IMG/VR virus record: IMGVR_UViG_3300043411_000921 | Location: 62,001 to 126,000 of that record | DNA: 64,000 nucleotides | Direction: 5' to 3' (one strand) | Shown: piece after piece, positions 9,056-23,878 of the stretch | Numbering within the stretch: position 1 is the stretch's first letter | Layout: each line of letters begins with the position of its first letter | Notes under the pieces: model-generated | Told to the model about the DNA's origin: nothing | Database searches by the model: none | The model's input: the letters and a program-made list of their open reading frames with translations, nothing else | Made by a program: the position numbers and the translations under genes

Positions 9056-9078
9056 TGTTGGTGTATGGTGCTCTTAGC

Positions 9079-10059
9079 ATGAGCACTTTACCAAAAAAAC
9101 CAAGATCAACAACCTCAGATTCCCCTCCCAACTTCACAAAGAAGCATCTCAAAATCATTCAGACAAGCACGGAAAACATTCGTACTTCTGATTCGATTGA
9201 TTCTCTCCTTGAAGGAACAACAAAGATTGAACCTGTTGGATTGGACTTCTCTGCTCCAACCAACATGGATTATCTTTCAATCCGTGGCAACATCTCTTTC
9301 TCCGAGCTTTCTACCTGGAGAACGTGTGCTTTTCGTCACAAGCTGAAATACCTGGACAAGATCAATGGTGGAGCACTTGATGGTCCATCTGAACACACAG
9401 AGTTTGGTCATGTGATTCACACGGCCCTCGAAGTGTTTCTGGAAACTCGAAAGATGCCATCCTATGATGATGTCAAGGTCGGCCTTTCCTACGCATTCAG
9501 CGAACTTCCAAACGTTGCTTCTCTGAAAGAAGAAGAATGGCATGGTGTCGTTGAACCAATCCTTTCGGAAGTCCCAGCGTTTATGGACGAAATGTTTGGA
9601 AAAGACTGGAAGTATGTTGCCAGTGAATATCCATTGATGGAGCCAATTGAAGGACACAATCATCTCTTCAAAGGTTTCATTGACGGCGTGATCACTGCAA
9701 TGAACAAAAGAGGTGAGGAAATCACCTATTTGGTAGACTGGAAAACGGCCAGTTATTCTTGGCCTGTTTCCAAGAAAACAGATCCAAACAAGACAATGCA
9801 GTTGGTTCTTTACAAACACTTCTACTCCCAGAAAACGGGTATTCCTCTGGATAAAATCCGTTGTGCCTTTGTTGTTCTCCGCAGGTCTAAAAAACCTGGG
9901 AACTGTGAGTATGTTTCAGTATCTGTTGGACCCAAGGCACTCAGCAACGCTCTGGAATCCGTTGACTCGATGTTGGGTCATGTGAAAAGGAAGATTTTCC
10001 CCAAAAACAGGCAAAACTGTCGGTTCTGCCCCTATGCCAACACTCCTCATTGCCCTTGA
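9079..10059 (+). CDS. PD-(D/E)XK exonuclease, Cas4/AddB-like with Fe-S cysteines
   Basis: ISFSELSTWRTC, FGHVIH, GFIDGV, VDWKT, QLVLY, CRFCPYANTPHC. Confidence 0.85.
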   Translation: MSTLPKKPRSTTSDSPPNFTKKHLKIIQTSTENIRTSDSIDSLLEGTTKIEPVGLDFSAPTNMDYLSIRGNISFSELSTWRTCAFRHKLKYLDKINGGALDGPSEHTEFGHVIHTALEVFLETRKMPSYDDVKVGLSYAFSELPNVASLKEEEWHGVVEPILSEVPAFMDEMFGKDWKYVASEYPLMEPIEGHNHLFKGFIDGVITAMNKRGEEITYLVDWKTASYSWPVSKKTDPNKTMQLVLYKHFYSQKTGIPLDKIRCAFVVLRRSKKPGNCEYVSVSVGPKALSNALESVDSMLGHVKRKIFPKNRQNCRFCPYANTPHCP

Positions 10060-10076
10060 AAGAAAAAACACAAGAC

Positions 10077-10841
10077 ATGGAAACAGAATTTCTTGACGAA
10101 TTGATCCCACTTCTTCCAGAAGAACCTATCATCATTTATCAGTCACCTCTTGGTCACAGAGAGAAGAGAGATTATTCAGGAAGCAAAAAGGAGCTTGTGA
10201 TTCTCCTATCGGATGAATCACATCAGCCTGTTGATTTCAAAAACTGTTTGGTGTTTAGGAATTACATTCCCTCAAAACCAGCAGCCAACGAAAGACCAAT
10301 TCCTCTTCCATTTGCCTCTGGATTCAAGAGTGATTTAACGGAGCACTTGTCATTCAATGACAGGAAATACATGATGGCCTTTGCTGGTTTTGTGGGCGAT
10401 ATGCGGAGGCAACAAGCTGTCAATGCCATGTCCACCATTGGGAAGCAATTAAATCGTGTCTATATTCGTCCTAGTGAGGGTTTCTCAAAAGGATTGACGC
10501 GACAGGAATATAGTGAAGTGATGTGCAATACCATGTTGGCAATCTGTCCACCTGGAGGAAGTCACGAATCATTCAGGATGACAGAGGCTTTGAAAGCTGG
10601 ATGTATTCCTGTGTTGTTGAACAAAAAAGATCGTCAGTGGTATGACCCGGACTTCAAGACAGCTTTTTGGTTGCAATCGTGGGATGAACTTCCAGGGCTT
10701 GCTTCCTGGGTCATTAATACCGATCCAATGATTTTGAAGGAACGCTCCAAGGCTTGTAGAGAATTTTACAAGACTCATCTTTCACCAGAAGCAGTCGCAG
10801 GATATATCACAAGAGAATGGTACAAGGATCAAACCAAATGA
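10077..10841 (+). CDS. Exostosin-like (GT47) glycosyltransferase
   Basis: YSEVMCNTMLAICPPGGSHESFRMTEALKAGCIPVLL. Confidence 0.7.
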   Translation: METEFLDELIPLLPEEPIIIYQSPLGHREKRDYSGSKKELVILLSDESHQPVDFKNCLVFRNYIPSKPAANERPIPLPFASGFKSDLTEHLSFNDRKYMMAFAGFVGDMRRQQAVNAMSTIGKQLNRVYIRPSEGFSKGLTRQEYSEVMCNTMLAICPPGGSHESFRMTEALKAGCIPVLLNKKDRQWYDPDFKTAFWLQSWDELPGLASWVINTDPMILKERSKACREFYKTHLSPEAVAGYITREWYKDQTK

Positions 10842-11800
10842 AAAAAAACAGAGCGGCGATTGTCACAGGTGGAGCAGGCTTCATTGGAAGCAATCTCGTC
10901 GATACCCTCATTGCCAAAGACTTTCAAGTTATCTGCATCGACAATGAATCAGCAGAAAGCAATTCACAGTTTTACTGGAATCCAGCAGCACACAACATCA
11001 AAGGAAATGTCTGTCACCAAGACAGCATTCTTTCAGATGTTCGTTGGATTGCCAATGAACACAACTTGAATATTGAGACGGTTTATCACCTTGCAGCAGA
11101 AGCAAGGATCCAGCCTTCCTTCAAGAAAAAGGATCTGGTGTTCAGAACCAATGTGATGGGAACGGTTTCGATGTTGGAAGTGGCAAGGGAGTTGAAGGCA
11201 AGCAGGTTTGTTTATTCTTCCACTTCTTCGGCATACGGGAACGCTTCTATTCCTTTCGATCAATACACTCCAACGAAGTGTTCCACGCCTTATGCGGCTG
11301 GGAAGGTGGGTGGTGAGCTTGCTTGCTTTGCTTATGATACAACAGGTGCAGAAGATGAACTCCAAACGACTGTGTTGAGGTACTTCAACGTTTATGGACC
11401 AAGACAGCCAATCAAAGGGCAATATGCCCCAGTGGTTGGGTTGTTCTTGCGCCAAAAAGCAGAAGGAAAACCTCTGACGGTTGTTGGTGATGGAAAGCAA
11501 ACCAGGGATTTTACCCACGTCGATGACATTGTTGCTGGAACAATTGCCGCTGGTGATGTTTCCAACTTTATTCCAGAGAGCATTAGGAAGAATCCAATCA
11601 ACCTTGGGACAATGGAGAGATATAGCATCCTCTATCTGGCAGAAATGATCGGTGGAGAAATCGTTCATGTGCCCGAGAGAAGGAATGAAGCTCGGCATAC
11701 CCAAGCTGACATTTCTGTCGCCCATGTTTGGTTGAACTATCAACCAACTGTTAAACTAACCGATTGGATCAAAGAGGAATTGAAGAAGGTGAAGAAATGA
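10838..11800 (+). CDS. NAD-dependent nucleotide-sugar epimerase/dehydratase (extended SDR)
   Basis: VTGGAGFIGS, HLAA, YSSTSSAYG, YAAGK, LRYFNVYGP, RDFTHVDD. Confidence 0.9.
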   Translation: MKKNRAAIVTGGAGFIGSNLVDTLIAKDFQVICIDNESAESNSQFYWNPAAHNIKGNVCHQDSILSDVRWIANEHNLNIETVYHLAAEARIQPSFKKKDLVFRTNVMGTVSMLEVARELKASRFVYSSTSSAYGNASIPFDQYTPTKCSTPYAAGKVGGELACFAYDTTGAEDELQTTVLRYFNVYGPRQPIKGQYAPVVGLFLRQKAEGKPLTVVGDGKQTRDFTHVDDIVAGTIAAGDVSNFIPESIRKNPINLGTMERYSILYLAEMIGGEIVHVPERRNEARHTQADISVAHVWLNYQPTVKLTDWIKEELKKVKK

Positions 11801-12519
11801 CAATGACTGTTTTGGTAAAGTTTCCGACAAGAGGAAGGCCGGACAGGTTTTTCCCTGTGTTGGACAGGTATTACTACGGATCCAAGAAAAAGAATGCAAC
11901 CAAGTTTCTTGTGTCGTGTGACCTGGATGATCCCAGCATGAACAATGATACTGTAAGACAGAAGTTCTCTCAGTATCAGAATCTTGAAGTGTGCTATGGT
12001 AACTCCAAAACCAAAATTGAAGCTGTGAATGCTGACATGGATAAAGCTGGGGAATACGATATTCTCCTGCTCGCCTCAGATGACATGATCCCAGAGGAAA
12101 GAGGATACGATGAGATCATCAGAGGAAAGATGGAGGAGTTGTATCCAGACACCGATGGTGTTCTTTGGTTTTTTGATGGGTACCGAAAAGACTTCAACAC
12201 TCTCTGTATTCTCGGAAGGAAATATTACGAGCGGTTTGGGTACATCTATCATCCAGATTACAAGTCCTTCTGGTCTGACAACGAGTTTACCGAGGTTGCG
12301 AACTCTCTTGGCAAGCAGACTTTCATTGACAAGGTAATCATTAGACACGTTCACCCCGACTGGATTCAAAGAGATCCAGCAACGAAAACGCTGTTCCAAC
12401 AGATTCATCCAACCACAACGAATATCGGGCTTGATGAAACCTTCATGAAGAATCTGCCCTACGAAAGACAGGATGCTGCTGTGTATCTCCAGAGAAAGGC
12501 AGCAGGGTTTCCTAGATGA
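11797..12519 (+). CDS. GT-A (GT2-like) glycosyltransferase
   Basis: VKFPTRGRP, ASDD, YHPDYKSFWSDNEFT, IRHVH. Confidence 0.75.
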   Translation: MTMTVLVKFPTRGRPDRFFPVLDRYYYGSKKKNATKFLVSCDLDDPSMNNDTVRQKFSQYQNLEVCYGNSKTKIEAVNADMDKAGEYDILLLASDDMIPEERGYDEIIRGKMEELYPDTDGVLWFFDGYRKDFNTLCILGRKYYERFGYIYHPDYKSFWSDNEFTEVANSLGKQTFIDKVIIRHVHPDWIQRDPATKTLFQQIHPTTTNIGLDETFMKNLPYERQDAAVYLQRKAAGFPR

Positions 12520-13169
12520 AAAAGATCATCTCGTTCTGTCTCTGGGGAAATGATCCAAAGTACACGATTGGAGCTTTGAGAAACGCAGAGCTTGCCAAGA
12601 CAGTTTATCCTGGGTGGACTCCAAGGTTTTACGTTGGTTCTTCCACTTCCCCAGCCGTAACAAAACAACTTCTTCGTGCAGGCGCAGAGGTTGTCAACAT
12701 GACCGAACCTGGAGATTGGAGAGGAATGTTCTGGAGGTTTTATCCTGCTGGGGAGCCTGATGTCGAAGTAATGTTGTCCAGAGACACAGACTCAAGACTT
12801 TCCATGAGAGAAAGGGCTGCCGTTGATGAATGGCTCTCAGACCCAGAGAAAGTGTTCCATATCATGAGAGATCATCCAGCACACAAAACAGAAATTCTTG
12901 GTGGGATGTGGGGTGCAAGAGGAGGATTCCTTTCAGAGATGAAACAGTTGATCGACGAATATCCAGCAGGAGACTTCTGGCAGGTTGATCAAAACTTCCT
13001 CAGAGAGAAGATTTATCCACTCGTCAAACATCGTGCAAAAGTTCATGATCCCTTCTTTGAGAACAAACCTTTCCCAACACCAAGAATTGGAACAGAGTTT
13101 GTTGGTGACGTGTTTGATTCGACCGATGTAAGACACCCAGAATATTGGAAAGCAATTCCCCAACAATGA
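12516..13169 (+). CDS. Putative GT-A glycosyltransferase-like protein
   Basis: IISFCLWG, MFWRF, SRDTDSR (DxD), MRDHPAH, ILGGMWG; sits inside the glycan cluster. Confidence 0.6.
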   Translation: MKKIISFCLWGNDPKYTIGALRNAELAKTVYPGWTPRFYVGSSTSPAVTKQLLRAGAEVVNMTEPGDWRGMFWRFYPAGEPDVEVMLSRDTDSRLSMRERAAVDEWLSDPEKVFHIMRDHPAHKTEILGGMWGARGGFLSEMKQLIDEYPAGDFWQVDQNFLREKIYPLVKHRAKVHDPFFENKPFPTPRIGTEFVGDVFDSTDVRHPEYWKAIPQQ

Positions 13170-14044
13170 AAATCCTCATGATTCAAGAGCGTGGCAGGCA
13201 CGAAGCAAACAGAGAGTTTCGTGAAAGTGAAAACTTCCGACGTTCCTTCGAGCGAATTGGTGTTGAGTCTGAGGTCTGGGGAATCAACCAACCAACCTTT
13301 TCAATCCCATTCCATGAAATGATCAAGGACTATGATGTGATCTTTGCGATGGAGAACTACGACGAATCTGGTTGGCTCCCAGACCTTTCTCAAATCACAA
13401 ACAAATTCAAGGTGTTCTGGAGTATTGACTCTCACCTCGCTTTGGGTCAGCACGTTTTCTTTTCCAAGCGAGCCAAGTTTGACTTGCATCTCAACAGCAC
13501 GGAAGGATACCTCAAACACTTCCTCCGTCATTCTCCGACTTGTCTCTGGTTTCCCAATGCTTATCCCGATGATCTGATTGATCATATTCCACATGCCTCT
13601 AAATCGCACGACGTTGGCTTTTGCGGGTCACTGATTGGTGGAAGGGGTCAGTGGTTGGAAAATATTTCCTCTGCCTCTAATAAGGCGATTAGACGGGATG
13701 CTGGGGTTCTGGGAAGAGGGATGGTGGAAGCCATCAACTCCTACAAGGTTGCCTTGAACCAAAGTCTTCTGGATGACATCAACTACCGAGTGTTTGAAAC
13801 TCTTGGAGCAAAAACATGTTTGCTCACCAACACCGTTCCTGGGTTGGATAAGCTTTTCATCCCAGGCAAACACTTGATGACTTACAGTAATCAGCAAGAG
13901 CTTGTTGAAAAACTGCATTATCTTCTGGGGAAGCCAGAAGTTGTTGAAGAAGTTGCTGCTGCTGGGTATGATCACGTTAGAGCAAATCACACTTATGATG
14001 TGAGAGCCAAACAACTGATGGAGATTTTGAAGGAGAAGGTATGA
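13166..14044 (+). CDS. GT-B glycosyltransferase, CgeB/Glyco_trans_1_2-like
   Basis: YKVALN...NYRVFETLG...ELVEKLHYLL...GYDHVRANHTYDVRA. Confidence 0.8.
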   Translation: MKILMIQERGRHEANREFRESENFRRSFERIGVESEVWGINQPTFSIPFHEMIKDYDVIFAMENYDESGWLPDLSQITNKFKVFWSIDSHLALGQHVFFSKRAKFDLHLNSTEGYLKHFLRHSPTCLWFPNAYPDDLIDHIPHASKSHDVGFCGSLIGGRGQWLENISSASNKAIRRDAGVLGRGMVEAINSYKVALNQSLLDDINYRVFETLGAKTCLLTNTVPGLDKLFIPGKHLMTYSNQQELVEKLHYLLGKPEVVEEVAAAGYDHVRANHTYDVRAKQLMEILKEKV

Positions 14045-14862
14045 AGATTTTGAAACCAGTGGTAGGTGGACACGATGGAAGTTCTTTCAGAGAACTTCTT
14101 GATATTTGGGAAGAAATGGGGCTGTGTGAGGTTGTTCCAGGACCAACGCCAACACAAACATATCCAGGGTTGGATCATATTTCACAATATCCAGAGTCAA
14201 GACCTTGGGTTGATCGGGTTGGAGGAATCCTTCTCTATGACAACCCAATCCTCGACAAACTATCTCAGCACTTGACTTGGGAAATGGCTTTGTGGGCCAA
14301 TCAAGTTCACAAGGGAGAAAATTGTTTTCCTTGGACCTTCTGGGCAAAGCATCCAAAGGTCATGGAAAAGATCAGGAAAGAAGGTATCCCGGATTATTCC
14401 GGTCGTGCCTTTGAAAGCATTTTCATTGGAACATTCACAACAGGACTTCGTGGCGGACATGATTGGTCAAAAGCCATTCAGAAATACTGGATGGGGCAGC
14501 ATAGCCAACGAATTGTATCCAATGACCAGTATCTCAATTTGTTGAAAAACAGCAAGTTTGGCTTGTGTCTCCCTGGTGTTGGACCAAAGTGTTTGAGAGA
14601 TATTGAGTTGATTGGAATGGGAACAGTTCCAGTGTTTACCCCTGGAGTTTCTACTGATTACTACAACCCTCCACAAAAGAACGTTCACTACCTCTACGCC
14701 GAATCCCCTGAAGAAGTGCGAGAAGTTATTTCCAAATGTTCTCCTGCTCAATGGACAGAGATGAGTGAAGCTTGTCTGGAATGGTATGAAGCTAACTGCT
14801 CTCCTCAAGGTTCCTTCAACCTCACCCAAAAAATCATTGAAGACAACAGGAGGAAGAAGTGA
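14041..14862 (+). CDS. Putative GT-B glycosyltransferase (GT47/CgeB-like C-terminus)
   Basis: YLNLLKNSKFGLCLPGVGPKCLRDIELIGMGTVPV. Confidence 0.6.
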   Translation: MKILKPVVGGHDGSSFRELLDIWEEMGLCEVVPGPTPTQTYPGLDHISQYPESRPWVDRVGGILLYDNPILDKLSQHLTWEMALWANQVHKGENCFPWTFWAKHPKVMEKIRKEGIPDYSGRAFESIFIGTFTTGLRGGHDWSKAIQKYWMGQHSQRIVSNDQYLNLLKNSKFGLCLPGVGPKCLRDIELIGMGTVPVFTPGVSTDYYNPPQKNVHYLYAESPEEVREVISKCSPAQWTEMSEACLEWYEANCSPQGSFNLTQKIIEDNRRKK

Positions 14863-15644
14863 GCAAGAGCGACAACCTTGTTTTTATTCCTCACATGGGG
14901 CTTGGTGACGTTATTCTGGTAAATGGTTTGCTGCGTTATCTTGCCAAATCTTACAAAACCGTAGTGATGCCATGCAAGGAGAACAACCTTCTCACCGTAA
15001 GACGAATGTTTGAGGATATGGAGAATCTGTTCCTCCTTCCAGTTGTTGGTGGTTTGAAATACACTTCTGCACAAGAAGATGTCAAGCAAGCTCAAATGCT
15101 GGGGAAGACCTACAAACTCTATGGATATGATCACATCGGGCTTGGTTTTTTTGGAAATAGGTTCCGTGAGTTCGAACAAACCATTCACAACAAAACAATG
15201 ACTTATGAGGAATTCTTCTATCTGGAGGCTGGGGTTCCTTTTGAAGAGAAGTGGAATTCATTCAAACTAAACAGGAACCCGTGGAGGGAATTAGATTTGT
15301 TTGATAGGTTTGGCGTGTCTCCTGGGGAATATGTTTTTTTGCATGATGACCCGGATAGAGGAAGAGTTATTGACAGAAGCATTTTTCCTCCTGGGTTGCC
15401 TGTGATCACTCCGAAGGAGATGTTCTATCGTGGAGACATTCTGGATTACGGGTATGTCATGGAGAACGCCAAAGAACTTCACATGACAAACAGCTCATTT
15501 GCTGACTTGGCTGATTTCTTCAACCTCCCAGCAGACCAGAAGAAGTGCATTCACCTCTACGCTTTGACAGAAGGACACTTTCATTGTCCTGTAAAATACA
15601 AGCATAACTTCCAGACGATTTACAACTCTCCGTCCAATCCTTAG
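14859..15644 (+). CDS. Putative glycosyltransferase (GT9-like N-terminal motif)
   Basis: HMGLGDVILVNGLLRYL and AKELHMTNSSF; cluster context. Confidence 0.5.
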   Translation: MSKSDNLVFIPHMGLGDVILVNGLLRYLAKSYKTVVMPCKENNLLTVRRMFEDMENLFLLPVVGGLKYTSAQEDVKQAQMLGKTYKLYGYDHIGLGFFGNRFREFEQTIHNKTMTYEEFFYLEAGVPFEEKWNSFKLNRNPWRELDLFDRFGVSPGEYVFLHDDPDRGRVIDRSIFPPGLPVITPKEMFYRGDILDYGYVMENAKELHMTNSSFADLADFFNLPADQKKCIHLYALTEGHFHCPVKYKHNFQTIYNSPSNP

Positions 15645-15667
15645 ACGCGCTCGCAACATTATCGGGC

Positions 15668-16069
15668 ATGACTGAAATTCTCATTCCCGTCTCCGCTGGT
15701 GAGCTTTTTGACAAAATCACCATCCTCAAAATCAAACTCCAAAAGATTCAAGACCAAGCCAAACTCAGGAATGTTCATTCGGAACTCTTGAAGCTGGAGA
15801 AGGTTGTTTCGGATAATGGACTTTCCATCCCAACAGAGCTTTTTGATAGGCTAATGGGAGTCAACAACCGTCTGTGGGAAACCGAAGACCTTATTCGTGA
15901 AAAAGAGTCCAAAGGTCTTTATGATGATGACTTCATCAGGTTTGCTCTGCTTGATGCACAACTCAACGATTTGAGATTTGTTGTCAAGCGAGAGATCAAC
16001 AACCTGTTTGATTCTTCTGTAAAGGAAGAGAAGTCATACAGTGAAGAAGTTCTCAACAGAAAGAAGTGA
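15668..16069 (+). CDS. DUF6165-like protein
   Basis: IPVSAGELFDKITILKIK...VNNRLWETED...NDLRFVVKREIN. Confidence 0.7.
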   Translation: MTEILIPVSAGELFDKITILKIKLQKIQDQAKLRNVHSELLKLEKVVSDNGLSIPTELFDRLMGVNNRLWETEDLIREKESKGLYDDDFIRFALLDAQLNDLRFVVKREINNLFDSSVKEEKSYSEEVLNRKK

Positions 16070-17204
16070 GCTTGTGGCAACACCAATCATTCAAATTGAA
16101 CCTTGGATTGATGAGATTGAGGAAGGTCTCCTAGTTGATTCAATTCGTACGAAGTATGTCACAGAGCACGAATTTACCAGCCGCTTTGAAAGACAAATAG
16201 AAAACCTTACAGGTGCCAAACACGCTGTTGCTATGACAAATGGAACAGCAGCCCTGTTTTGTGCCTTCAAAGCCTTGGGACTCCAGCCGGGAGATGAGGT
16301 CATCGTTCCCAATATCACCTTTGTTGCAACAGCCAACGCGGCGATTATGGCGGGCTTGAAACCCGTCTTGTGTGAGATAGAACAAGACTACTTCTGCATT
16401 GACACAGAAAAAGCTTCTGGGCTTATTACGGAGCGAACCAAGGCCATCGTCCCTGTTCACCTCTATGGCCAAAGCGCCAACATGGGCAAGGTGATGGCAT
16501 TTGCCAAAAAACACAACCTCTTTGTTGTTGAAGATGCTGCTCAGGGCGTTGGAGTGATGCACAAAGGCCAGCACGTTGGAACGATTGGAGACATTGGAAT
16601 TCTCTCCTTCTATGGAAATAAGACAATCACTTGTGGGGAAGGTGGAGTTGTCATCACCAACAGCAAAGAACTCAGAGACGCTTGCTACCGTCTGAAAAAC
16701 CACGGCAGAGACAAAAAGGGAATATTCATTCACCAAGAGATTGGTTTTAACTTCGCTTTCACCGAGATGCAAGCCGCAGTCGGCTTGGCTCAAATGACAA
16801 AACTGAACAATGTCATCAATCAAAAGCGAAAAATTCACGAGAAGTATGTCCGTGAATTGGCTGGGATACCGGGGTTCCAGTTTTGCAAGATCAACCACGA
16901 AGTTACAACTCATCCAGTTTTTTGGTTCACTTCTGCGCTGGCTGAGAAAAGACAGGAGTTGCAGGATTTTCTCTCCGAAAGAGGGATTGGAAGCAGGTTG
17001 TTTTTCTATCCCATGCACCAACAACCATGTTATGCTGGAATGAAGAGGGAGATGGGGATTCGAGAGGATGACCCAGGACAGTTTCATTACAGTGAGTTTG
17101 TGTACTCCAGGGGAATATCCTTGCCATCCTCTTACAACCTGACAGACGAGCAGCAAGACAGAATTATCGGGGCTGTAAAAGCCTTCTACGAGGGAAACAA
17201 ATGA
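16041..17204 (+). CDS. DegT/DnrJ PLP sugar aminotransferase, perosamine-synthase-like
   Basis: TNGTAAL, PVHLYGQ, VEDAAQ, SFYGNKTITCGEGG (Schiff-base Lys); exact start uncertain. Confidence 0.85.
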   Translation: MKKFSTERSELVATPIIQIEPWIDEIEEGLLVDSIRTKYVTEHEFTSRFERQIENLTGAKHAVAMTNGTAALFCAFKALGLQPGDEVIVPNITFVATANAAIMAGLKPVLCEIEQDYFCIDTEKASGLITERTKAIVPVHLYGQSANMGKVMAFAKKHNLFVVEDAAQGVGVMHKGQHVGTIGDIGILSFYGNKTITCGEGGVVITNSKELRDACYRLKNHGRDKKGIFIHQEIGFNFAFTEMQAAVGLAQMTKLNNVINQKRKIHEKYVRELAGIPGFQFCKINHEVTTHPVFWFTSALAEKRQELQDFLSERGIGSRLFFYPMHQQPCYAGMKREMGIREDDPGQFHYSEFVYSRGISLPSSYNLTDEQQDRIIGAVKAFYEGNK

Positions 17205-18355
17205 TCGAGCTTGTGAAAGATACCATCGACAAGAAAGACATCAACCAACTCATCAAGTGGTTGAAAACATATCCAAGACTCACCAAGGGTGAATTGACAA
17301 CCAAATTTGAGGAGAAGTGGTCGAAAATGCTGGGAGTTGAACACAGTGTTTTTGTGAACTCTGGTTCGTCTGCAATTCTCATGATGCTCCAAGCTCTTTT
17401 GGAATCTGGAAGAGTTCAACGAGGAAGTAAGGTCGTTGTCCCAGCTTTATCCTGGGCAACTGACTTTTCTTCTCCTGTTCAACTTGGCTTTGAACCAATT
17501 GTTTGTGATTGCAACCTGGAGGATCTCTCTGTTGACTTGAATCAGTTGAAAGAAATCTTTGAAGTTGAAAAGCCCGCAGCCTTGATTCTTGTTTCTGTTC
17601 TGGGATTGGTTCCAGACATGGACGCTGTTGTCCAACTCTGTCAAGAACACAATGTTATTCTGCTGGAAGATGTGTGTGAGTCTTTGGGCTCAACCTACAA
17701 AGGCAGGCAACTCGGAACCTTCGGTGCCATGAGCATCTTTTCCACTTACTTCGGTCATCACATCAGCACGATTGAAGGCGGAATGGTTTGCACCAATGAC
17801 CCAGAACTTAACATGGTTTTGAAAGCAATCAGAAACCACGGGTGGGATAGAGACCTCACAACAGAACAAAAAACAGAACTCAGGACCGCGTTCGGCGTTG
17901 ATGACTTCAGTGCTCTCTACACGTTTTACTTCCTTGGGTTCAACTTCCGTTCAACCGATCTCCAGGCGTTCCTTGGAATGGGACAACTAGACAAGCTTCC
18001 TTCGATTGTAAAGAAGCGCAACAAAAACTTCTTGCAGTATAAGAAGGAGATTTACAATCTCTGGTCTCCGCAAAGCTCTGAGGGTGGGTTTGTTTCCAAC
18101 TTTGCCTATCCAGTGCTTCTCCAGAACAAGGAAGAGGCATTGGTGAGATTAAACGCTGCTGGGGTTCAAGTGCGTCCTTTGATTTGTGGGAGTATGACTT
18201 CCCAGCCGTTCTACACGAAGAACTTTCCAACACCAAAATATGACACGCCAAATGCAAGGCTTGTTGACAAGCACGGCTTCTACCTTCCAAATCATCCAAA
18301 GCTGACACGAAAAGAAATTTCTGTTGTGTGTGCAGCTATCAAAGACCTCTGGTAA
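17201..18355 (+). CDS. ColD/E1-like PLP-dependent 3-dehydratase
   Basis: VNSGSSA, LEDVCESLG, STYFGHHISTIEGG (His in place of Lys), RNHGWDR, GFNFRSTDLQA. Confidence 0.8.
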   Translation: MIELVKDTIDKKDINQLIKWLKTYPRLTKGELTTKFEEKWSKMLGVEHSVFVNSGSSAILMMLQALLESGRVQRGSKVVVPALSWATDFSSPVQLGFEPIVCDCNLEDLSVDLNQLKEIFEVEKPAALILVSVLGLVPDMDAVVQLCQEHNVILLEDVCESLGSTYKGRQLGTFGAMSIFSTYFGHHISTIEGGMVCTNDPELNMVLKAIRNHGWDRDLTTEQKTELRTAFGVDDFSALYTFYFLGFNFRSTDLQAFLGMGQLDKLPSIVKKRNKNFLQYKKEIYNLWSPQSSEGGFVSNFAYPVLLQNKEEALVRLNAAGVQVRPLICGSMTSQPFYTKNFPTPKYDTPNARLVDKHGFYLPNHPKLTRKEISVVCAAIKDLW

Positions 18356-18360
18356 ACCAA

Positions 18361-19269
18361 ATGGCAATCAACATTTCACTGGAAACTCATAGACCTCTCT
18401 ATGAGGACTTCTACGCTTGCCTTGATTTTCTTCATGGTGTGAAAGACGAGGATTACTCCTACCCAGACAGGATTGTCCCTTTTCACATTTACTCTGAGTT
18501 TAAGACCGACAAAGAGATCGTCAGCTTGATGTCTTACTTCGCCACACAAAACCTTGAGAAAACCAAGGTGATTGTTTGGTCTGACTATGACATCACCAAC
18601 GAACCAAGAGTTCAGAGGTTCAAACACTTGGTTGATTTCAGAGTTTGGAATGCTGAGAAGGAAGCGGTTGGAAGTCCGATTGAAGGAGACACGAGAATGT
18701 TTCGGGCTGCTGATCAGAAACATTATCTCCAGAGTGATCTTTTGAGACTGCTTGCTTTGTGGAAGTACGGAGGCGTCTGGATCGACATGGATATTATCCT
18801 CCTCAGAGATTTCAAACCTCTTTTGGATCAAGAATGGATGTATATGTGGGGAAGTGAAACAGACTTCAAAGCCCAAGGAGCCTGTGCCTCTGTTCTCAGT
18901 CTCCAGCCAAAGTCGTACCTTGCAACAGAGCTTCTTGTTGAAGCACAGAAGATGCCAATTGTTCCCAACTCTACATGCTGGGGCAAGGATATGTTTGCTC
19001 AACTTTACCGCAGATTACCTTTCCAGGTGATGCCAGCAACGTTTTTCAACATTGAATGGTGTATGAACAAGCGTATTCCCGGAGCTGGCGACGCTGCTGA
19101 GTCCGGTTGGTTCAAGAGCCTTCCCAGCAACCACAAACACTTGTTCCCAGAAACGTTTGCTTGGCATTGGCATAACAGCAGCAAGAAGGATTTGATTGTT
19201 GAGCCAGGATCCAAGTTTGATCTTTTGACCAAGTTGACAGAACAGAAACTGGTTGATCGAGGTCTTTGA
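18361..19269 (+). CDS. GT32-like glycosyltransferase (DXD sugar-binding)
   Basis: SDLLRLLALWKYGGVWIDMDIILL, FAWHWHN. Confidence 0.8.
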   Translation: MAINISLETHRPLYEDFYACLDFLHGVKDEDYSYPDRIVPFHIYSEFKTDKEIVSLMSYFATQNLEKTKVIVWSDYDITNEPRVQRFKHLVDFRVWNAEKEAVGSPIEGDTRMFRAADQKHYLQSDLLRLLALWKYGGVWIDMDIILLRDFKPLLDQEWMYMWGSETDFKAQGACASVLSLQPKSYLATELLVEAQKMPIVPNSTCWGKDMFAQLYRRLPFQVMPATFFNIEWCMNKRIPGAGDAAESGWFKSLPSNHKHLFPETFAWHWHNSSKKDLIVEPGSKFDLLTKLTEQKLVDRGL

Positions 19270-19313
19270 GAGTCAATACATAAACAACCCACAGAATCAA
19301 TCCTTGTGGGTAA

Positions 19314-19958
19314 ATGCCAGAAAACAAACAATGGGCAACAAAAGAGGTAGCAGTTCAACACGGTTATCTCTCCCCACCTTCCCAACCCCTTCCCAGCCAT
19401 CTAGCAGCAATCCAAGCAATCAAACCATTCCTTCTTCAACTTCGCAAGTCTGATAAAGATAAACTCTACGTCAGTGACTTGGGCTGTGGAAATGGAAGAA
19501 TGATCCTTGCTCTCGAACAAGTGCTTGGTCCTTCTGTTCCATTTGGTTATGTCGGATACGATTTCAACGAATCTTGCTTGGAGGAAGCGAGAAGGAATTT
19601 CCCAGATCGCTTTTTCATGACAATGGATTTGGATGCTTATGATGGTATGGCCCCAACCCATTCAGATTTGGTTATCCTTGACAGCACCTTGTCGATGGTA
19701 GAAAGACCCAAAGAACTCCTCCTCGGGCTTCTAAAAGCCAACAGAGCGGTTCTGGTGGAGCGTATCAGAACCGGAGAAAAAACAGTCAGAGAAGAATATG
19801 TTTGGGGAGGAATGACTCAGCCATCAGTCAACTGGGCATTCCACCCTTCCTTCTTCTTTGAAGTTGCCAATGAATCAGGTTGCATGATCGCTCACAGAAG
19901 CGACACACGAATCCTTTTTGTGAAAGATGAAGACGAAGAAAACAGCAATGATGAATAA
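19314..19958 (+). CDS. Class I SAM-dependent methyltransferase
   Basis: VSDLGCGNGRM, YVGYDFN. Confidence 0.8.
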   Translation: MPENKQWATKEVAVQHGYLSPPSQPLPSHLAAIQAIKPFLLQLRKSDKDKLYVSDLGCGNGRMILALEQVLGPSVPFGYVGYDFNESCLEEARRNFPDRFFMTMDLDAYDGMAPTHSDLVILDSTLSMVERPKELLLGLLKANRAVLVERIRTGEKTVREEYVWGGMTQPSVNWAFHPSFFFEVANESGCMIAHRSDTRILFVKDEDEENSNDE

Positions 19959-20871
19959 CAATCAGACAACAACAATCAGTGTGATCGGGAATGGATTTGT
20001 GGGTGGCGCAGTTGCCAATGGCTTCTCAAGGCTCAATCCAAAGGTTTACGACATTGATCCGAAAAGATCAACGTGCTCCCTAACAGAAGCTCTTGAATCA
20101 AAATTCATCTTTGTCTGTCTTCCAACCCCAATGGTAAGTGCAGAAGGTGGAGAAGCAAATCTCTCCATCATCGAATCCTTCTTTCAACAAGCATTCCAAC
20201 ATTCCATCAATCCCTCTTCTGTCTTTGTCATCAAATCAACAGTTCCAGTAGGAACAACCAAAAGACTTCAGAAACAATTCCCTGGTTTGAGGTTGGTTCA
20301 CAATCCAGAGTTCCTGACAGCAGCAAGGGCCAACCTGGATTTCATCAATGCAGACAGAACTGTTTTGGGTGGTGATGACCAGGATGCCCTTCAATCGCTC
20401 CAGGAGCTTTATGCGGGCGAGTTCCCTCATGTTCCTACCCTTACCATGTCCAGCACCGACAGCGAGCTTGTAAAATACTCTGCGAACTGTTTCCTGGCAA
20501 CCAAGACCATGTTCTTCAACGAGATCAAATTCCTCGCTGAGAAAATGGGTGCAACCTATGAGAACGTTGTCGCGGGAGTTGTCTCCGACAAAAGAATTGG
20601 TCCGAGTCACACAAAAGTTCCCGGACCTGATGGAGACTACGGGTTTGGTGGTACCTGTTTCCCCAAAGACATCAATGCCCTTGTTTCAACGATTGAAAGT
20701 TGTCAAGAAGATTGCTTAGTGGAAGATAACCAGAAGAGGGATCCAAAAGGGACTCATATAGTTCCTTCACCTTCGTCTAAGATTTTCAAAGCTGTCTGGG
20801 AGAGGAACAAGGAAGTTAGGAAGAACTGGGATTGGGCATCCAGTCCATCTGCCGTGAAAGGTCTGTCGTGA
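19948..20871 (+). CDS. ugd: UDP-glucose/GDP-mannose 6-dehydrogenase, short form lacking the C-terminal domain
   Basis: VIGNGFVG, VCLPTP, IKSTV, NPEFL, ELVKYSANCFLA, GFGGTCFPKD; carries repeat copy 2 near the C-terminus. Confidence 0.85.
   Translation: MMNNNQTTTISVIGNGFVGGAVANGFSRLNPKVYDIDPKRSTCSLTEALESKFIFVCLPTPMVSAEGGEANLSIIESFFQQAFQHSINPSSVFVIKSTVPVGTTKRLQKQFPGLRLVHNPEFLTAARANLDFINADRTVLGGDDQDALQSLQELYAGEFPHVPTLTMSSTDSELVKYSANCFLATKTMFFNEIKFLAEKMGATYENVVAGVVSDKRIGPSHTKVPGPDGDYGFGGTCFPKDINALVSTIESCQEDCLVEDNQKRDPKGTHIVPSPSSKIFKAVWERNKEVRKNWDWASSPSAVKGLS
20716..20746 (+). repeat. Dispersed repeat, copy 2 (in frame in the dehydrogenase)
   Basis: TTAGTGGAAGATAACCAGAAGAGGGATCCAA, encoding LVEDNQKRDP. 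Confidence 0.9.
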
Positions 20872-21117
20872 AAGTCAAGACGGCACTGCAATCCAAAACC
20901 GTACTCGAAAGACTACTATCATAAAGTCAAAGGCATTCCCGCCAAAGAAGTCTGGAAAAGGGACAAACAAAGAGTCAAAGCCTTGAAAGCTCTTGGTTAT
21001 TCAGTCTTCGTTGTTTGGGAAAATGATTTCAAAGATGAGCGAACTAAGACACTGGAAGGTGTCAAAGAATTTCTAGGGAAAGAGAATGAATCAACAACAA
21101 CTTCAACAGCCTGTTAG
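20872..21117 (+). pseudogene. 5'-truncated Vsr/EDxHD-like endonuclease remnant
   Basis: HCNPKPYSKDYYHKVKGIPAKEVWKRDKQRVKALKALGYSVFVVWENDFK; no in-frame start before the motif; the frame is closed upstream by the ugd TGA. Confidence 0.7.
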
Positions 21118-22649
21118 GAAAAACAAGATCCTGGTATTGAGCGACCATCCATTAAACTGACTTGTGACAGTGGATGTAAAATTGGGTGAATTGCTGGAAA
21201 CTCCTGAGAGCAGCACACGCAACAGCAAAACTGGAAACGGTATGTGCGATTGCAAAAAAGATGTGTTGATTGGACAATCAGCAGCCAAGCTCCTGTCTGG
21301 AAACAGTGGAGAAGGTTCAACGACTACGGTTAGCCTAAAAGCTCTTGCTCATGGCGATGATCCGACAGCGCCCAGCAATTCGACAATCGAATTGATGATA
21401 TAGTCTGTTCGTTGGTGAAAATCAGCGAGTAAACGTGTGTACTTCGGGTGTTGGTACCCAAAGCCGCTTTCTTATTCATGGTCTTGTAGCAACGGGAAGA
21501 TATTCGTTCCGTTGTCTTGGAGGAGCGATCAAACACCCGAACTATGATCCAATCGTAGTAAACCCAGATTTCATCATCAAACCTGTTGATGGCTTCGGAG
21601 ACAGGAATATGATCAGGAACCTCCTGATCAATGAAAGACCAGACGCGGTTCTACTGTTCACAGATCCAAGACAGTTTATGTGGCTTTGGGAAATGGAAGA
21701 TGAGATTCATCAGGTTTGCCCTATCGCTTATTGGCACGTCTGGGACAATGATCCATACCCTGCATTCAACGATGTTTGGTATCACTCAACAGACCTGATC
21801 AACTGTCTTTCTCACAAAACCTACGAGCTTGTCAAACCTCATTTTCCAGAGAGAACAAACTACATTCCTCACGCCTTTCCGAAAGAGGTTTATCATCCTC
21901 TTCCAGCAGAGACAGTAAAACAACTGAGGAGTGTGAATTACAAGGAGCGTGCTGACTGGTTCATTGGAGCTTGGATCAACAGGAATGCAACCAGGAAGAT
22001 GCCAAACGATGTCTTGATGTCTTGGAAGATGTTTTTGGATGATCTGGAGAAGAAGGAAGGTCACAGGAAGGCAATGCTCGTGATGCACACTGACCCACAA
22101 GACACAGAAGGACCAAACCTTTTTGCAACCGTCGAGAACCTTGGATTGACCAGTAATGTTGTGTTCTCAACTCAAAAGGTTGATTTCAACGACATGAATG
22201 CGCTTTACAACTCAGTTGATTTTATTGTGAACGTGTCGAAGGCAGAAGGGTTTGGATTGGCAACCTTGTCTGGTTTGATGGTTGGGAAACCGATCATTGC
22301 ACTGAAGACTGGGGGAATGACACGTCAGGTTGTGGATTATCGAGATGGAACAGAGCATGGGGTTGCCATTGATCCAGCTTGCAGAGTTCTTGTTGGCTCT
22401 CAGATGGTTCCTTACATCTTCGACGATCACTTCAAACATGAAGATTTGTCAGCAGCCTTTCTAAAGGTTTATTCCATGTCTCCAGAAGAGAAAGAAGTGC
22501 TTACCAAAAAGAACATTGCTTATGCTGAACACGAGTTCGGTTATGAGAAGATGATCTCTGAGTGGGATAGGACTCTGGATAAAGTGATCAGAGATTTCAA
22601 GAGCAACCCACCAAAACGCTGGACATGCTCCAAACTCAACAACAAGTGA
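21086..22649 (+). CDS. GT4 glycosyltransferase, spliced: join(21086..21152,21436..22649), 426 aa
   Basis: Exon 1 gives MNQQQLQQPVRKNKILVLSDHP; splicing restores SDHPLCTSGVGTQ; later EGFGL, GKPII motifs. Confidence 0.85.
21153..21435 (+). ncRNA. Group I self-splicing intron, no internal ORF (283 nt)
   Basis: P AATTGCTGGAAA 21189, Q AATCAGCAG 21276, R GTTCAACGACTA 21315, S ATGATATAGTCT 21395; P1 CATCCAT/GTGGATG with U-G at the splice site; P9 hairpin 21409-21428; terminal G 21435; frame restored. Confidence 0.92.
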
Positions 22650-22660
22650 ATAACAACACA

Positions 22661-23878
22661 ATGAACACTTCATCCACAAAGAAAACTGTTCTGCTTAGGG
22701 GTCCATTGTTGGTACATGCCGGTTACGGCGTGCATACCCGTCAAATTGCTCGTTGGCTGTTTCGTGTTGCATCCGAACAACACGATCTTGACATTACAAC
22801 CGAACCACTTCCTTGGGGAGACACACACCTTCTCGTAGACCCAGAAGCAGAAGATGGACTCATTGGACAAATCCTTCAAGCTTCGGGAAACAAGAAGTCC
22901 TTCTACGATGTAACAATCCAAGTCCAGCTTCCAAACGAATGGAATCCTTTCTTGGGAAATTTTAACGTTGGTGTGACTGCTGGAGTTGAGACAGATAAGT
23001 GCAATCCAGCTTGGATTGATTGCATCAACAGGATGGACATGGTTGTTGTTCCCAGCACCTTCACCAAAGAAACCTTCATGGCAACAGGTGAAATCAAAGT
23101 TCCTGTTGCTGTGATCCCAGAAGCGTTTCCAGACGCAATGCAAGACCAGAACCAACTTATTCCAGAGGATCCAGACTTGGATTTGGGGTTGACAACAAAG
23201 TTCAATTTGTTGGTTGTTGGTCAGTTGACAGGAACTAATCCTGAGAATGACAGGAAGAACCTTCCTTACACTCTCAAGTGGATTGCTGAAACTTTTGCAG
23301 GCAACAAAGATATTGGTGTGATTGTCAAGACGAATGCTGGAGCACAGACACAACTTGACAAGAAGAACGTTGAAGGAATTTTCAAGAAGCTTGTTACCGA
23401 GATTCAGCCTGCTGGTGTTCCTGGTCCAACCTTTTATCTTCTTCATGGTCACATGACTGATGAAGAGATGAACAGGCTGTATCGGCACAAGGAAATTGCA
23501 GCCCTGATTTCTTTGACACACGGCGAAGGTTATGGACTTCCCATTCTTGAAGCTGCTGCTTGCGGTCTTCCAGTGATTGCAACAAACTGGAGTGGGCATC
23601 TTGAATTCCTGAAGCATGGAAAGTTTATTCCGGTTGACAGGATGTTGGGAGAGGTTCCAGCTTCCAGGGTCGATGGTCAAATCTTCCTTGCTGGAATGAA
23701 GTGGGCCAACCCAGTTGAGATTGACGTGAAGAGAAGGTTGAGGAAGTTTTACGAGTCTTCTTCTATGCCAAAGCAATGGGCGAGGGAATTGGCTCGTGTG
23801 ATTCAGAAGGAATACTCGTTCGACGCGGTATCCAGTATTTACTCAAAAGCCCTTGGTGGCGTTTTGGGGAGTTCCTGA
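22661..23878 (+). CDS. GT4 glycosyltransferase
   Basis: GYGVHTR, GVTAGVETD, VVVPSTFTK, RKNL, THGEGYGLPILEAAACGLPVIATNWSGHLEFL. Confidence 0.85.
   Translation: MNTSSTKKTVLLRGPLLVHAGYGVHTRQIARWLFRVASEQHDLDITTEPLPWGDTHLLVDPEAEDGLIGQILQASGNKKSFYDVTIQVQLPNEWNPFLGNFNVGVTAGVETDKCNPAWIDCINRMDMVVVPSTFTKETFMATGEIKVPVAVIPEAFPDAMQDQNQLIPEDPDLDLGLTTKFNLLVVGQLTGTNPENDRKNLPYTLKWIAETFAGNKDIGVIVKTNAGAQTQLDKKNVEGIFKKLVTEIQPAGVPGPTFYLLHGHMTDEEMNRLYRHKEIAALISLTHGEGYGLPILEAAACGLPVIATNWSGHLEFLKHGKFIPVDRMLGEVPASRVDGQIFLAGMKWANPVEIDVKRRLRKFYESSSMPKQWARELARVIQKEYSFDAVSSIYSKALGGVLGSS

What the first reader, a model, noticed from the sequence alone, without database searches (positions are those of the whole stretch)
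21153..21435. Hidden group I intron in a glycosyltransferase gene
The ORF track starts this gene at an internal GTG. The real N-terminus (ILVLSDHP) lies 283 nt upstream and ends in a stop unless spliced. P/Q/R/S cores, P4 (UGCUG/CAGCA), P7 (GACUA/UAGUC), a 7-bp P1 with U21152-G21170, a short P10, P9 and the terminal G are all present. Splicing gives CCA TTG TGT ACT (PLCT). Phage group I introns are classically in td, nrd, pol, lysin, terminase or psbA genes; I do not recall a GT4 host. It implies this GT is conserved and selected enough to be a homing target.
Basis: partly seen in the sequence, partly recalled or inferred. Interest (0 to 1): 0.85.

Follow-up and report, generated by a model that had tools for sequence, protein, structure and literature searches.

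The report
Self-splicing intron in phage glycosyltransferase
A 283-base self-splicing group I intron interrupts a highly conserved glycosyltransferase gene of a large uncultured phage, and next to it lies the wreck of the homing endonuclease gene that probably spread it, so this is a good new example of a known kind of selfish element.

Summary
Window 21153-21435 (+) matches Rfam Intron_gpI at 84 bits (cut-off 50, E 6.5e-20). Joining U21152 to U21436 gives SDHP-L-CTSGVG, the motif that uninterrupted homologs carry, including a 93%-identical relative with no intron.

I found 13 distinct copies of the same intron in viral and metagenome contigs. All sit at the same codon position of the same gene. 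On their alignment 98.7% of paired cells are standard pairs (29-42% when partners are slid) and 35 of 75 pairs show compensatory changes. These include P1 and P10, which change together with the exon sequence. Exon 2 has dN/dS about 0.04 between intron-bearing relatives, so the interrupted gene is in use.

Window 20868-21117 is the remnant of a free-standing Vsr-like (EDxHD-type) homing endonuclease gene, broken by a 667-bp deletion. Twelve of the 13 intron alleles have this gene or its 3' remnant directly upstream of exon 1. Alleles with the endonuclease gene but no intron also exist.

The best reading is an ORF-less subgroup IA intron moved in trans by the adjacent endonuclease (collaborative homing). 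That step is inferred, not shown. It is a new member of a known kind, in a host gene I found no report of.

The parts
21086..21152 (+). Exon 1 of the glycosyltransferase gene: ATG plus 22 codons plus the first base (U) of the Leu codon. Its first 10 codons overlap the 3' end of the endonuclease remnant, in another frame.
   Evidence: Translation. It matches the N-termini KKHKILMLSDHPL... of uninterrupted homologs P0011-P0025.
21153..21435 (+). Group I intron, 283 nt, with no ORF of its own. It has P1, P3-P9 and P7.1/P7.2, lacks P2, and ends in G21435.
   Evidence: Rfam 84 bits. Structure and covariation on 13 homologous introns. Helix coordinates.
21146..21176 (+). P1 hairpin: 5' exon CAUCCAU paired with the internal guide GUGGAUG. 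U21152-G21170 is the wobble pair at the 5' splice site. The loop holds the P10 guide ACA 21167-21169.
   Evidence: Exon position -2 and its guide partner change together: G-C in 10 sequences, A-U in 3, never unpaired (pair 11/31).
21322..21405 (+). Catalytic core 3' half. P7 is GACUA 21322-21326 with UAGUC 21401-21405. P7.1/P7.2 is 21327-21364. The P3 3' strand is 21369-21375. P8 is 21376-21394.
   Evidence: P7 and P3 are invariant. P7.1/7.2 and P8 show compensatory changes.
21436..22649 (+). Exon 2 of the glycosyltransferase (UG + CTSGVGTQ... to the stop). UGU 21436-21438 forms P10 with the intron guide.
   Evidence: Pfam GT group 1 domains. dN/dS 0.037 against intron-bearing L020 and 0.035 against intron-less L004. 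P10 exists in four co-varying versions.
20868..21117 (+). Pseudogene of a free-standing Vsr-like (EDxHD-type) homing endonuclease. A vestigial GTG start overlaps the stop of the upstream gene. The deletion junction lies at GGCA 20882-20885. After it come 77 codons of the C-terminal nuclease domain (HCNP...VWENDF), out of frame with the start.
   Evidence: Alignment with the near-intact gene of L020 shows a 667-bp deletion. Weak Pfam MTES_1575 and DUF559 matches. Family alignments A3 and A6.
19927..20871 (+). Upstream neighbour, a short UDP-glucose/GDP-mannose dehydrogenase-like gene. It is not part of the element but marks its left boundary.
   Evidence: Pfam. In intron-less, endonuclease-less L004 the same gene, with the same short end, directly abuts the glycosyltransferase gene.

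Best explanation
[quoted passage not shown] It sits between the first and second base of the Leu codon in the conserved SDHP-L-CTSGVG motif of a GT4 glycosyltransferase gene, in a 241-kb contig of an uncultured tailed phage.

The intron's internal guide pairs with the last 7 bases of exon 1 (P1, with a U-G wobble at the splice site) and with the first 3 bases of exon 2 (P10). Guanosine-initiated self-splicing then joins U21152 to U21436 and restores the full-length enzyme.

The intron is one half of a two-part selfish element. The other half is a free-standing homing endonuclease gene directly upstream of exon 1. Its product has zinc ribbons and helical DNA-binding modules at the N-terminus and a Vsr-like nuclease domain at the C-terminus.

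By analogy with collaborative (trans) homing, the endonuclease would cut glycosyltransferase alleles that lack the element, near the intron insertion site. Repair from the donor would copy endonuclease gene, exon 1 and intron together. The intron would split the target and so protect the carrier genome.

In this window the endonuclease gene has decayed through a 667-bp deletion, and the intron survives because it splices.

Shown here: the intron's identity, boundaries and structure under selection; the intron-less alleles; the linkage to the endonuclease gene and that gene's decay. Inferred: self-splicing activity, the endonuclease's target site, and mobility.
For: Intron identity and boundaries:
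- Rfam gives 84 bits, E 6.5e-20.
- The splice junction restores the motif found in uninterrupted homologs and in the 93%-identical intron-less allele L004.

Structure:
- The same intron occurs at the same site in 13 distinct alleles, 249-287 nt long. All have U before the 5' splice site and G at the 3' end.
- 98.7% of cells are paired against 29-42% when partners are slid. 35 of 75 pairs have compensatory changes, and 0 of 500 shuffles reach this.
- P1 covaries with the exon. P10 has four versions: ACA/UGU, AUA/UAU, UUA/UAG and GCUCA/UGAGC.

The gene is in use:
- dN/dS is 0.037-0.044 between intron-bearing alleles.

Endonuclease:
- 12 of 13 intron alleles have the gene or its 3' remnant 113-155 nt upstream of the intron. 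None of 15 intron-less loci found through the glycosyltransferase has it.
- All five loci (four proteins) looked up from the endonuclease side place it directly upstream of this glycosyltransferase gene.
- A profile search finds Vsr at E 0.005.
- Foldseek gives a target-normalised TM-score of 0.76 to I-Bth0305I (3r3p) and 0.61 to Vsr (1cw0).
- E195, D208, H226 and D252 are invariant or nearly so in the family.

Patchy distribution:
- The glycosyltransferase tree needs at least 4-5 gains or losses of the intron.

Precedent:
- Collaborative homing is reviewed in PMC3984707. The Vsr-like EDxHD family is described in PMC3239194.
Against: No splicing or cleavage data exist, and everything is from uncultured contigs.

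Endonuclease gene and intron are separable. L047, L048 and L049 have an intact endonuclease gene next to an uninterrupted glycosyltransferase gene. L042 has the intron and no endonuclease gene. The endonuclease may therefore home on its own, with the intron merely hitch-hiking or unrelated to its target.

The intron groups roughly mirror the glycosyltransferase tree. Vertical descent with repeated loss explains much of the distribution without recent transfer.

The metagenome loci were found with an intron-derived 20-mer, so intron-bearing alleles are over-sampled and are not phylogenetically independent.

The Foldseek and PDB profile E-values for the nuclease domain are modest (0.005-0.03).
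Confidence: 0.8

Rival explanations
1. The intron is real and splices but is now an immobile, vertically inherited passenger. The upstream endonuclease is an independent free-standing element that homes into the intergenic site upstream of the glycosyltransferase gene by intron-less homing, and its target is not the intron insertion site. The association reflects only close physical linkage (about 70 nt) and co-conversion.
For: Alleles with the endonuclease gene but no intron exist (L047-L049). One allele has the intron but no endonuclease gene (L042). The intron groups parallel the glycosyltransferase tree.
Against: 12 of 13 intron alleles carry the endonuclease gene or its remnant. Only 25 endonuclease clusters were found, against more than 6500 glycosyltransferase clusters. 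Chance co-occurrence is therefore unlikely unless the two travel together. L004 lacks both elements while its sister alleles have both.
Confidence: 0.3
2. The intron no longer splices. The gene is dead, or only a truncated enzyme is made from the internal GTG at 21435.
For: Gene callers annotate only the 404-aa product (P0001-P0009). No expression data exist.
Against: dN/dS of exon 2 is about 0.04 within the intron-bearing lineage. Exon 1 keeps an ATG and the conserved KILVLSDHP in window and L020. P1 and P10 co-vary with the exons, which has no explanation unless splicing is under selection. A product starting at 21435 would lack the conserved KIL.LSDHP segment that 91 of the 120 best homologs carry.
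Confidence: 0.04
3. The region is some other structured RNA or a chance resemblance, not an intron.
For: None beyond the poor fit of the Rfam model's P1 and P2 segments.
Against: Rfam E 6.5e-20, full model length. Precise absence in L004 and in many other alleles. An exact in-frame junction in all 13 alleles.
Confidence: 0.01

Closest known systems
Phage subgroup IA (IA2-like) group I introns, such as those of T4 td/nrdB/sunY, Twort and SPO1-like phages (Rfam RF00028)
   Same: Same core: the P3-P7 pseudoknot, P4-P6, P8, a U-G pair in P1, a terminal G, and P7.1/P7.2 between P7 and the 3' strand of P3. It lies in a conserved coding motif of a phage gene, with stop codons just inside the intron. 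The core has 70-80% DNA similarity to introns in Staphylococcus, Lactococcus, Pseudomonas and Serratia phages.
   Different: The host gene is a GT4 glycosyltransferase, and a literature search found no report of that. There is no P2. The intron carries no endonuclease ORF. Subgroup assignment below 'IA' was not tested with subgroup-specific models. A recent survey states that IA2 is itself heterogeneous (PMC11878797).
Collaborative (trans) homing: the cyanophage S-PM2 psbA intron with free-standing F-CphI, the system of Bonocora and Shub, and T4 mobE with the nrdB intron (reviewed in PMC3984707; PMC2790892; PMC6083498)
   Same: [quoted passage not shown] Close relatives differ in presence or absence of both.
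   Different: The endonuclease belongs to another family: Vsr-like, whereas F-CphI uses an Endo VII motif (PMC6083498) and mobE is a predicted HNH enzyme (PMC2790892). Cleavage at the insertion site has not been tested here. All combinations of endonuclease gene and intron occur in nature, along with several stages of endonuclease decay. One lineage keeps a dead duplicate of exon 1 upstream of the endonuclease gene.
I-Bth0305I and the EDxHD family of Vsr-like homing endonucleases (PMC3239194; PDB 3R3P)
   Same: N-terminal DNA-binding modules plus a C-terminal Vsr-like nuclease. The composite Glu/Asp/His/Asp residues are conserved. The family is found in phages, both intron-associated and free-standing.
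   Different: I-Bth0305I is encoded inside its intron, in recA. Here the gene lies outside the intron. The N-terminus has CxxC zinc ribbons. Sequence similarity to 3R3P is marginal (profile E 0.31) and the link rests mainly on fold (target-normalised TM-score 0.76).

Membership tests
Group I intron (Rfam RF00028) | Covariance-model score above the curated gathering score | tested here: met
   84 bits against 50, E 6.5e-20, model positions 1-253 of 253. Homologous copies score 87-101 bits.
Group I intron (Rfam RF00028) | 5' splice site after a U that forms a U-G wobble in P1 with an internal guide sequence | tested here: met
   U21152-G21170. U-G in 13 of 13 alleles. The neighbouring pair covaries, G-C in 10 and A-U in 3.
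Group I intron (Rfam RF00028) | Terminal G at the 3' end, and P10 pairing of the guide with the 3' exon | tested here: met
   G at the last position in 13 of 13 alleles. P10 is 100% paired, and 2 of its 3 pairs show changes on both sides.
Group I intron (Rfam RF00028) | Conserved core helices P3-P8, with the P3/P7 pseudoknot supported by covariation | tested here: met
   98.7% of cells paired and 35 of 75 pairs compensatory. P3, P4 and P7 are nearly invariant, so they pair in every sequence but add almost no covariation.
Group I intron (Rfam RF00028) | Guanosine-dependent self-splicing | not testable with these tools
   This needs an in vitro transcript with GTP and Mg2+, or RNA-seq junction reads.
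Subgroup IA (IA2-like) | Extra P7.1/P7.2 pairings between P7 and the 3' strand of P3 | tested here: met
   Helix 13 (window 21327-21335 with 21353-21364) is 100% paired, with 2 pairs changed on both sides. That P7.1/P7.2 mark subgroup IA is from my own recollection of Michel and Westhof 1990. The review PMC3984707 lists these elements among the class criteria.
Subgroup IA (IA2-like) | Assignment by subgroup-specific models (GISSD) | not tested
   No subgroup models are available here. P2 is absent: only UAAAA separates P1 from P3.
EDxHD / Vsr-like homing endonucleases | Vsr-like nuclease fold | tested here: met
   Tested on the intact relative L005:2766-3686, not on the window. AlphaFold mean pLDDT 83. 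Foldseek target-normalised TM-scores: 3r3p_B 0.76, 3hrl 0.78, 1cw0 0.61. Profile against PDB finds Vsr at E 0.005.
EDxHD / Vsr-like homing endonucleases | Composite catalytic residues (Glu, Asp, His, Asp) present | tested here: not met
   In intact relatives E195, D208, H226 and D252 are invariant or nearly so. In the window the 667-bp deletion removes the region holding Glu and the first Asp and breaks the frame. The window copy is a pseudogene, not a working member.
EDxHD / Vsr-like homing endonucleases | Site-specific cleavage of the allele that lacks the element | not testable with these tools
   Requires expression of the enzyme and a cleavage assay.
Collaborative (trans) homing system | An ORF-less intron and a free-standing endonuclease gene adjacent at the same locus, polymorphic among relatives | tested here: met
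   L004 lacks both elements, while its sister alleles (window and L020) have both.
Collaborative (trans) homing system | [quoted passage not shown] | not testable with these tools
   Only indirect hints exist. The insertion site lies about 70 nt downstream of the endonuclease stop codon. The dead exon-1 copy in L005 ends at or just past the insertion site.

The most novel reading that the evidence does not exclude
The mobile unit may not be the intron alone but a cassette of endonuclease gene, a portable copy of exon 1 and the intron. On this reading it replaces the recipient's 5' gene end and sometimes leaves the old exon 1 behind as a dead duplicate, as in L005, L006 and L045. The natural alleles would then capture every stage of how a free-standing endonuclease and an ORF-less intron come together and fall apart: endonuclease only, both, decayed endonuclease with intron, intron only, and neither.
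Probability: 0.35. Interest if true: 0.6.

Novelty: new member of a known kind. Interest (0 to 1): 0.45.

Why it matters
Annotation: gene callers truncate this glycosyltransferase to 404 aa in every intron-bearing contig (P0001-P0009). Recognising the intron restores the true N-terminus, which holds the family's most conserved motif.

Biology: the literature read here describes collaborative homing, the proposed route by which introns acquire endonucleases, in two phage systems, plus trans homing by T4 mobE (PMC3984707, PMC2790892). This locus adds another candidate with a different endonuclease family. It also offers a natural series of states from many environmental phages: endonuclease only, both elements, decayed endonuclease, intron only, and neither. 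That series makes the model testable by simple cleavage assays and by population genomics.

It also shows that a virion- or host-modifying sugar transferase, not only DNA-metabolism genes, can be conserved enough to host such elements.

Tried and rejected
- **Other RNAs in the window.** An Rfam search at E <= 0.1 and a tRNA scan of the whole window found no second intron, riboswitch or tRNA.
- **The 79-aa ORF inside the intron (21164-21403).** It has no Pfam hit. It overlaps conserved helices, and the homologous introns have stop codons two to four codons into the intron in the exon frame. I rejected it as a gene.
- **The Mel-JY01 homolog.** It is annotated as two CDS and looked like a second intron case. 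The gap is only 10 nt and Rfam is negative, so it is a frameshift or stop.
- **Chance hits in the metagenome scan.** Three of the 14 hits to the intron 20-mer (L033, L039, L040) lie in a high-GC bacterial gene and are chance matches.
- **The short upstream dehydrogenase gene.** I first suspected the endonuclease insertion had truncated it. Intron-less L004 has the same short form, so this was rejected.
- **Direct sequence search of the endonuclease against PDB.** phmmer found nothing meaningful. Only the profile search and the fold comparison reached Vsr and I-Bth0305I.
- **Promoter and terminator scan around the locus.** It found no more sites than shuffled sequence gives.
- **Comparing intron and exon identity to detect recent transfer.** For example, L005 against L007 is 88% in the intron and 74% in exon 2. 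This is inconclusive because the intron is structurally constrained.

Full report
**1. The observation**

The ORF list starts the glycosyltransferase gene at GTG 21435. Upstream, ATG 21086 opens a 22-codon frame, MNQQQLQQPVRKNKILVLSDHP. Read straight on, it gives Leu-Asn-stop.

Rfam's group I intron model matches 21123-21427 on the + strand over its full length. The score is 84 bits against a gathering score of 50, E 6.5e-20. It remains the only Rfam match in the 64 kb when the threshold is relaxed to E 0.1.

- P1: CAUCCAU 21146-21152 with GUGGAUG 21170-21176, with U21152-G21170 at the splice site.
- P10: ACA 21167-21169 with UGU 21436-21438.
- P4: UGCUGG with UCAGCA.
- P7: GACUA with UAGUC.
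- P9: closed by a GAAA loop.
- Terminal G: G21435.

**2. The boundaries are fixed by intron-less alleles**

The exon-2 protein has more than 6500 homologs at E <= 0.001 among the 8000 candidates scored. Of the 120 best, 91 carry ...KILMLSDHPLCTSGVGVQ... without interruption. Seventeen begin at or just after the junction, as the window's annotated product does.

Joining U21152 to U21436 gives RKNKILVLSDHP-L-CTSGVGTQ.

A scan of viral contigs found 22 loci. L003 is the window's own source, IMGVR_UViG_3300043411_000921, 241 kb. L004 encodes a 93%-identical protein and reads GATCATCCATTGTGTACT without interruption.

The 21152|21436 junction is the only assignment that keeps three things together: a U before the 5' splice site, a G at the 3' end of the intron, and the reading frame.

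**3. One intron lineage, always at the same site**

Rfam finds the intron at the same place in L005, L006, L007 and L020. Exact-match scans with a 22-mer and a 20-mer from the intron core added L026, L031, L034-L038 and L041-L046. Three hits were chance matches in a high-GC bacterial gene.

Every real hit lies in this glycosyltransferase gene, between the first and second base of the same Leu codon. There are 13 distinct sequences of 249-287 nt. All follow a U and end in G.

**4. The structure is under selection**

I counted pairs on the 13-sequence alignment A5. The structure combined the RNAalifold consensus with P7 as a pseudoknot, plus P9 and P10.

- 98.7% of cells form standard pairs, against 29-42% when partners are slid by 1-3 columns.
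- 35 of 75 pairs show changes on both sides, and 0 of 500 shuffles reach this.
- P3, P4 and P7 are nearly invariant.
- P5, P5a-c, P6a/b, P7.1/7.2, P8 and P9 covary.

Most telling are the pairings between intron and exon. Exon position -2 is G with a C in the guide in 10 sequences, and A with a U in 3. P10 occurs as ACA/UGU, AUA/UAU, UUA/UAG and a 5-bp GCUCA/UGAGC. Such co-variation has no explanation unless splicing at exactly these sites is selected.

P7.1/P7.2 lie between P7 and the 3' strand of P3, which places the intron in subgroup IA. That criterion is from my own knowledge of Michel and Westhof 1990; the review PMC3984707 lists these elements among the class criteria. P2 is absent.

At the DNA level, only the intron core of this region resembles anything in the phage collection: introns of Staphylococcus, Lactococcus, Pseudomonas and Serratia phages.

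**5. The interrupted gene is in use**

Exon 2 has dN/dS 0.037 between the window and intron-bearing L020 (dS 0.26). The value is 0.044 between L005 and L006, and 0.035 between the window and intron-less L004. Exon 1 keeps its start codon and the conserved KIL.LSDHP in all intron alleles.

**6.

Window 20872-21114 translates to HCNPKPYSKDYYHKVKGIPAKEVWKRDKQRVKALKALGYSVFVVWENDF.... It gives weak matches to REase_MTES_1575 and DUF559.

In L020 (98% identical glycosyltransferase) the same place holds a roughly 320-codon gene whose ATG overlaps the stop codon of the upstream dehydrogenase-like gene. Relative to L020 the window has a 667-bp deletion between two GGCA repeats. This leaves a GTG and a few codons out of frame with the 3' part. 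L020 itself has a -1 frameshift in an A6 run.

Intact genes of 238-307 codons occur in L005/L006/L045, L007 (two in tandem), L026, L046 and L047-L050; in L034 and L037 only the conserved motifs were seen.

The family has invariant CxxC cysteines in the N-terminal half. Its C-terminal domain carries E195, D208, E219, G222, YWH226 and D252, all invariant or nearly so.

The link to known nucleases rests on these results:
- A profile of the C-terminal domain finds Vsr at E 0.005, and I-Bth0305I (3R3P) at E 0.31.
- An AlphaFold model has mean pLDDT 83.
- The model superposes on 3r3p_B at a target-normalised TM-score of 0.76, on 3hrl at 0.78 and on Vsr 1cw0 at 0.61.
- PHROGs labels the related families 'homing endonuclease', 'endonuclease' or 'HNH endonuclease' (the last for the N-terminal half).

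This corresponds to the Vsr-like 'EDxHD' family of PMC3239194.

**7. Linkage of the two elements**

Twelve of the 13 intron alleles have this gene or its 3' remnant directly upstream of exon 1, with the WExDF motif 113-155 nt before the intron.
- Remnants occur in the window, L031, L035 and L041.
- Only L042 has nothing.
- None of the 15 intron-less loci found through the glycosyltransferase has the motif within the stretch fetched.

The endonuclease family is rare: 25 clusters, against more than 6500 for the glycosyltransferase.

Starting from the endonuclease side, all five loci (four proteins) looked up lie directly upstream of this glycosyltransferase gene. Three of them (L047, L048, L049) have an intact endonuclease gene and an uninterrupted glycosyltransferase gene, with Rfam negative. 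So the two elements are separable, and all combinations exist.

On a glycosyltransferase tree, intron presence needs at least 4-5 gains or losses. L004, which lacks both elements, is sister to the window and L020, which have both.

The 3' remnant of the endonuclease gene probably persists in decayed alleles because it overlaps the start of exon 1. In the window, the remnant's frame stops at 21115-21117, which is inside exon 1.

**8. Mechanism**

Shown: the intron, its exact junctions, its selected structure, its absence from close relatives, its linkage to a Vsr-like endonuclease gene, and that gene's decay in the window.

Inferred, from established knowledge of group I introns: guanosine-initiated self-splicing guided by P1 and P10.

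Inferred by analogy with collaborative or trans homing (PMC3984707, PMC2790892, PMC6083498):
- The endonuclease cuts naive glycosyltransferase alleles near the insertion site.
- Repair copies the endonuclease gene, exon 1 and the intron.
- The intron splits the target and protects the carrier.

The main rival is that the endonuclease homes on its own and the intron merely travels with it or is inherited vertically. The alleles with an endonuclease gene but no intron keep this open.

**9. Context**

The window is from an uncultured tailed phage:
- It has a baseplate wedge protein and a UvsX-like recombinase.
- It carries a large block of sugar-modifying genes: GT47-like, epimerase/dehydratase, two aminotransferases, methyltransferase, dehydrogenase, and two GT4 genes.
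- Its nearest cultured relatives are distant: Microcystis phage Mel-JY01, Flavobacterium phage immuto and Rhodothermus phage RM378. In Mel-JY01 and immuto a PD-(D/E)XK nuclease gene lies upstream of the glycosyltransferase gene pair, with an IMPDH gene between them in Mel-JY01; the window also encodes both.

**10. Verdict**

The finding is confirmed. It is a new member of a known kind. The points of interest are the unreported host gene and the natural series of endonuclease and intron states, not the intron itself.

Noticed in passing
L005 2627-2716 (also in L006 and L045): A dead duplicate of glycosyltransferase exon 1, with its own ribosome-binding site and ATG (MSEQQKIDNDLIAKPSKKHKILILSDHPFC-stop), lies upstream of the endonuclease gene. 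The live exon 1 overlaps the endonuclease gene's 3' end. This suggests the cassette brought its own exon 1 when it inserted at or just past the intron site.
   Followed up: partly
L007 1977-2714 and 2761-3657: Two Vsr-like endonuclease genes of different subtypes lie in tandem upstream of the intron-bearing glycosyltransferase gene. The first is of the type found next to intron-less alleles (L047, L049).
   Followed up: partly
L020 about 3396-3420: The otherwise complete endonuclease gene of the window's closest relative is split by a -1 frameshift in an A6 run. One extra A would restore ...ADIHYPARKKVIEYHGDYWHCNP.... It could be real decay, a sequencing error or slippage.
   Followed up: no
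L048 5354-6166: A GIY-YIG endonuclease-like ORF sits between the two adjacent GT4 genes. This is a second kind of free-standing endonuclease at the same locus.
   Followed up: no
L001 2956-4447 (Microcystis phage Mel-JY01, PP395634.1): The homologous glycosyltransferase is annotated as two CDS separated by 10 nt. There is no intron signal, so it looks like a frameshift or stop in the record.
   Followed up: partly
window 19927-20871: The UDP-glucose/GDP-mannose dehydrogenase-like ORF lacks the C-terminal domain of that family. The same short form is conserved in L004 and L020, so it is not a truncation caused by the neighbouring element.
   Followed up: partly
window 10050-23878: A long same-strand block of sugar-nucleotide and glycosyltransferase genes: GT47-like, epimerase/dehydratase, two DegT-type aminotransferases, methyltransferase, and three or more glycosyltransferases. 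It is preceded by IMPDH-like (7303-8313) and PD-(D/E)XK nuclease (9055-10059) genes. The target of the glycosylation is unknown.
   Followed up: no
P0007; L050 (GCA_902725985.1, 399-kb contig): Near-identical proteins are labelled as coming from a 'Spirochaetes bacterium' MAG, and a 399-kb contig sits in a genome assembly. These are probably phage contigs binned with bacteria, and they might hint at the host.
   Followed up: no
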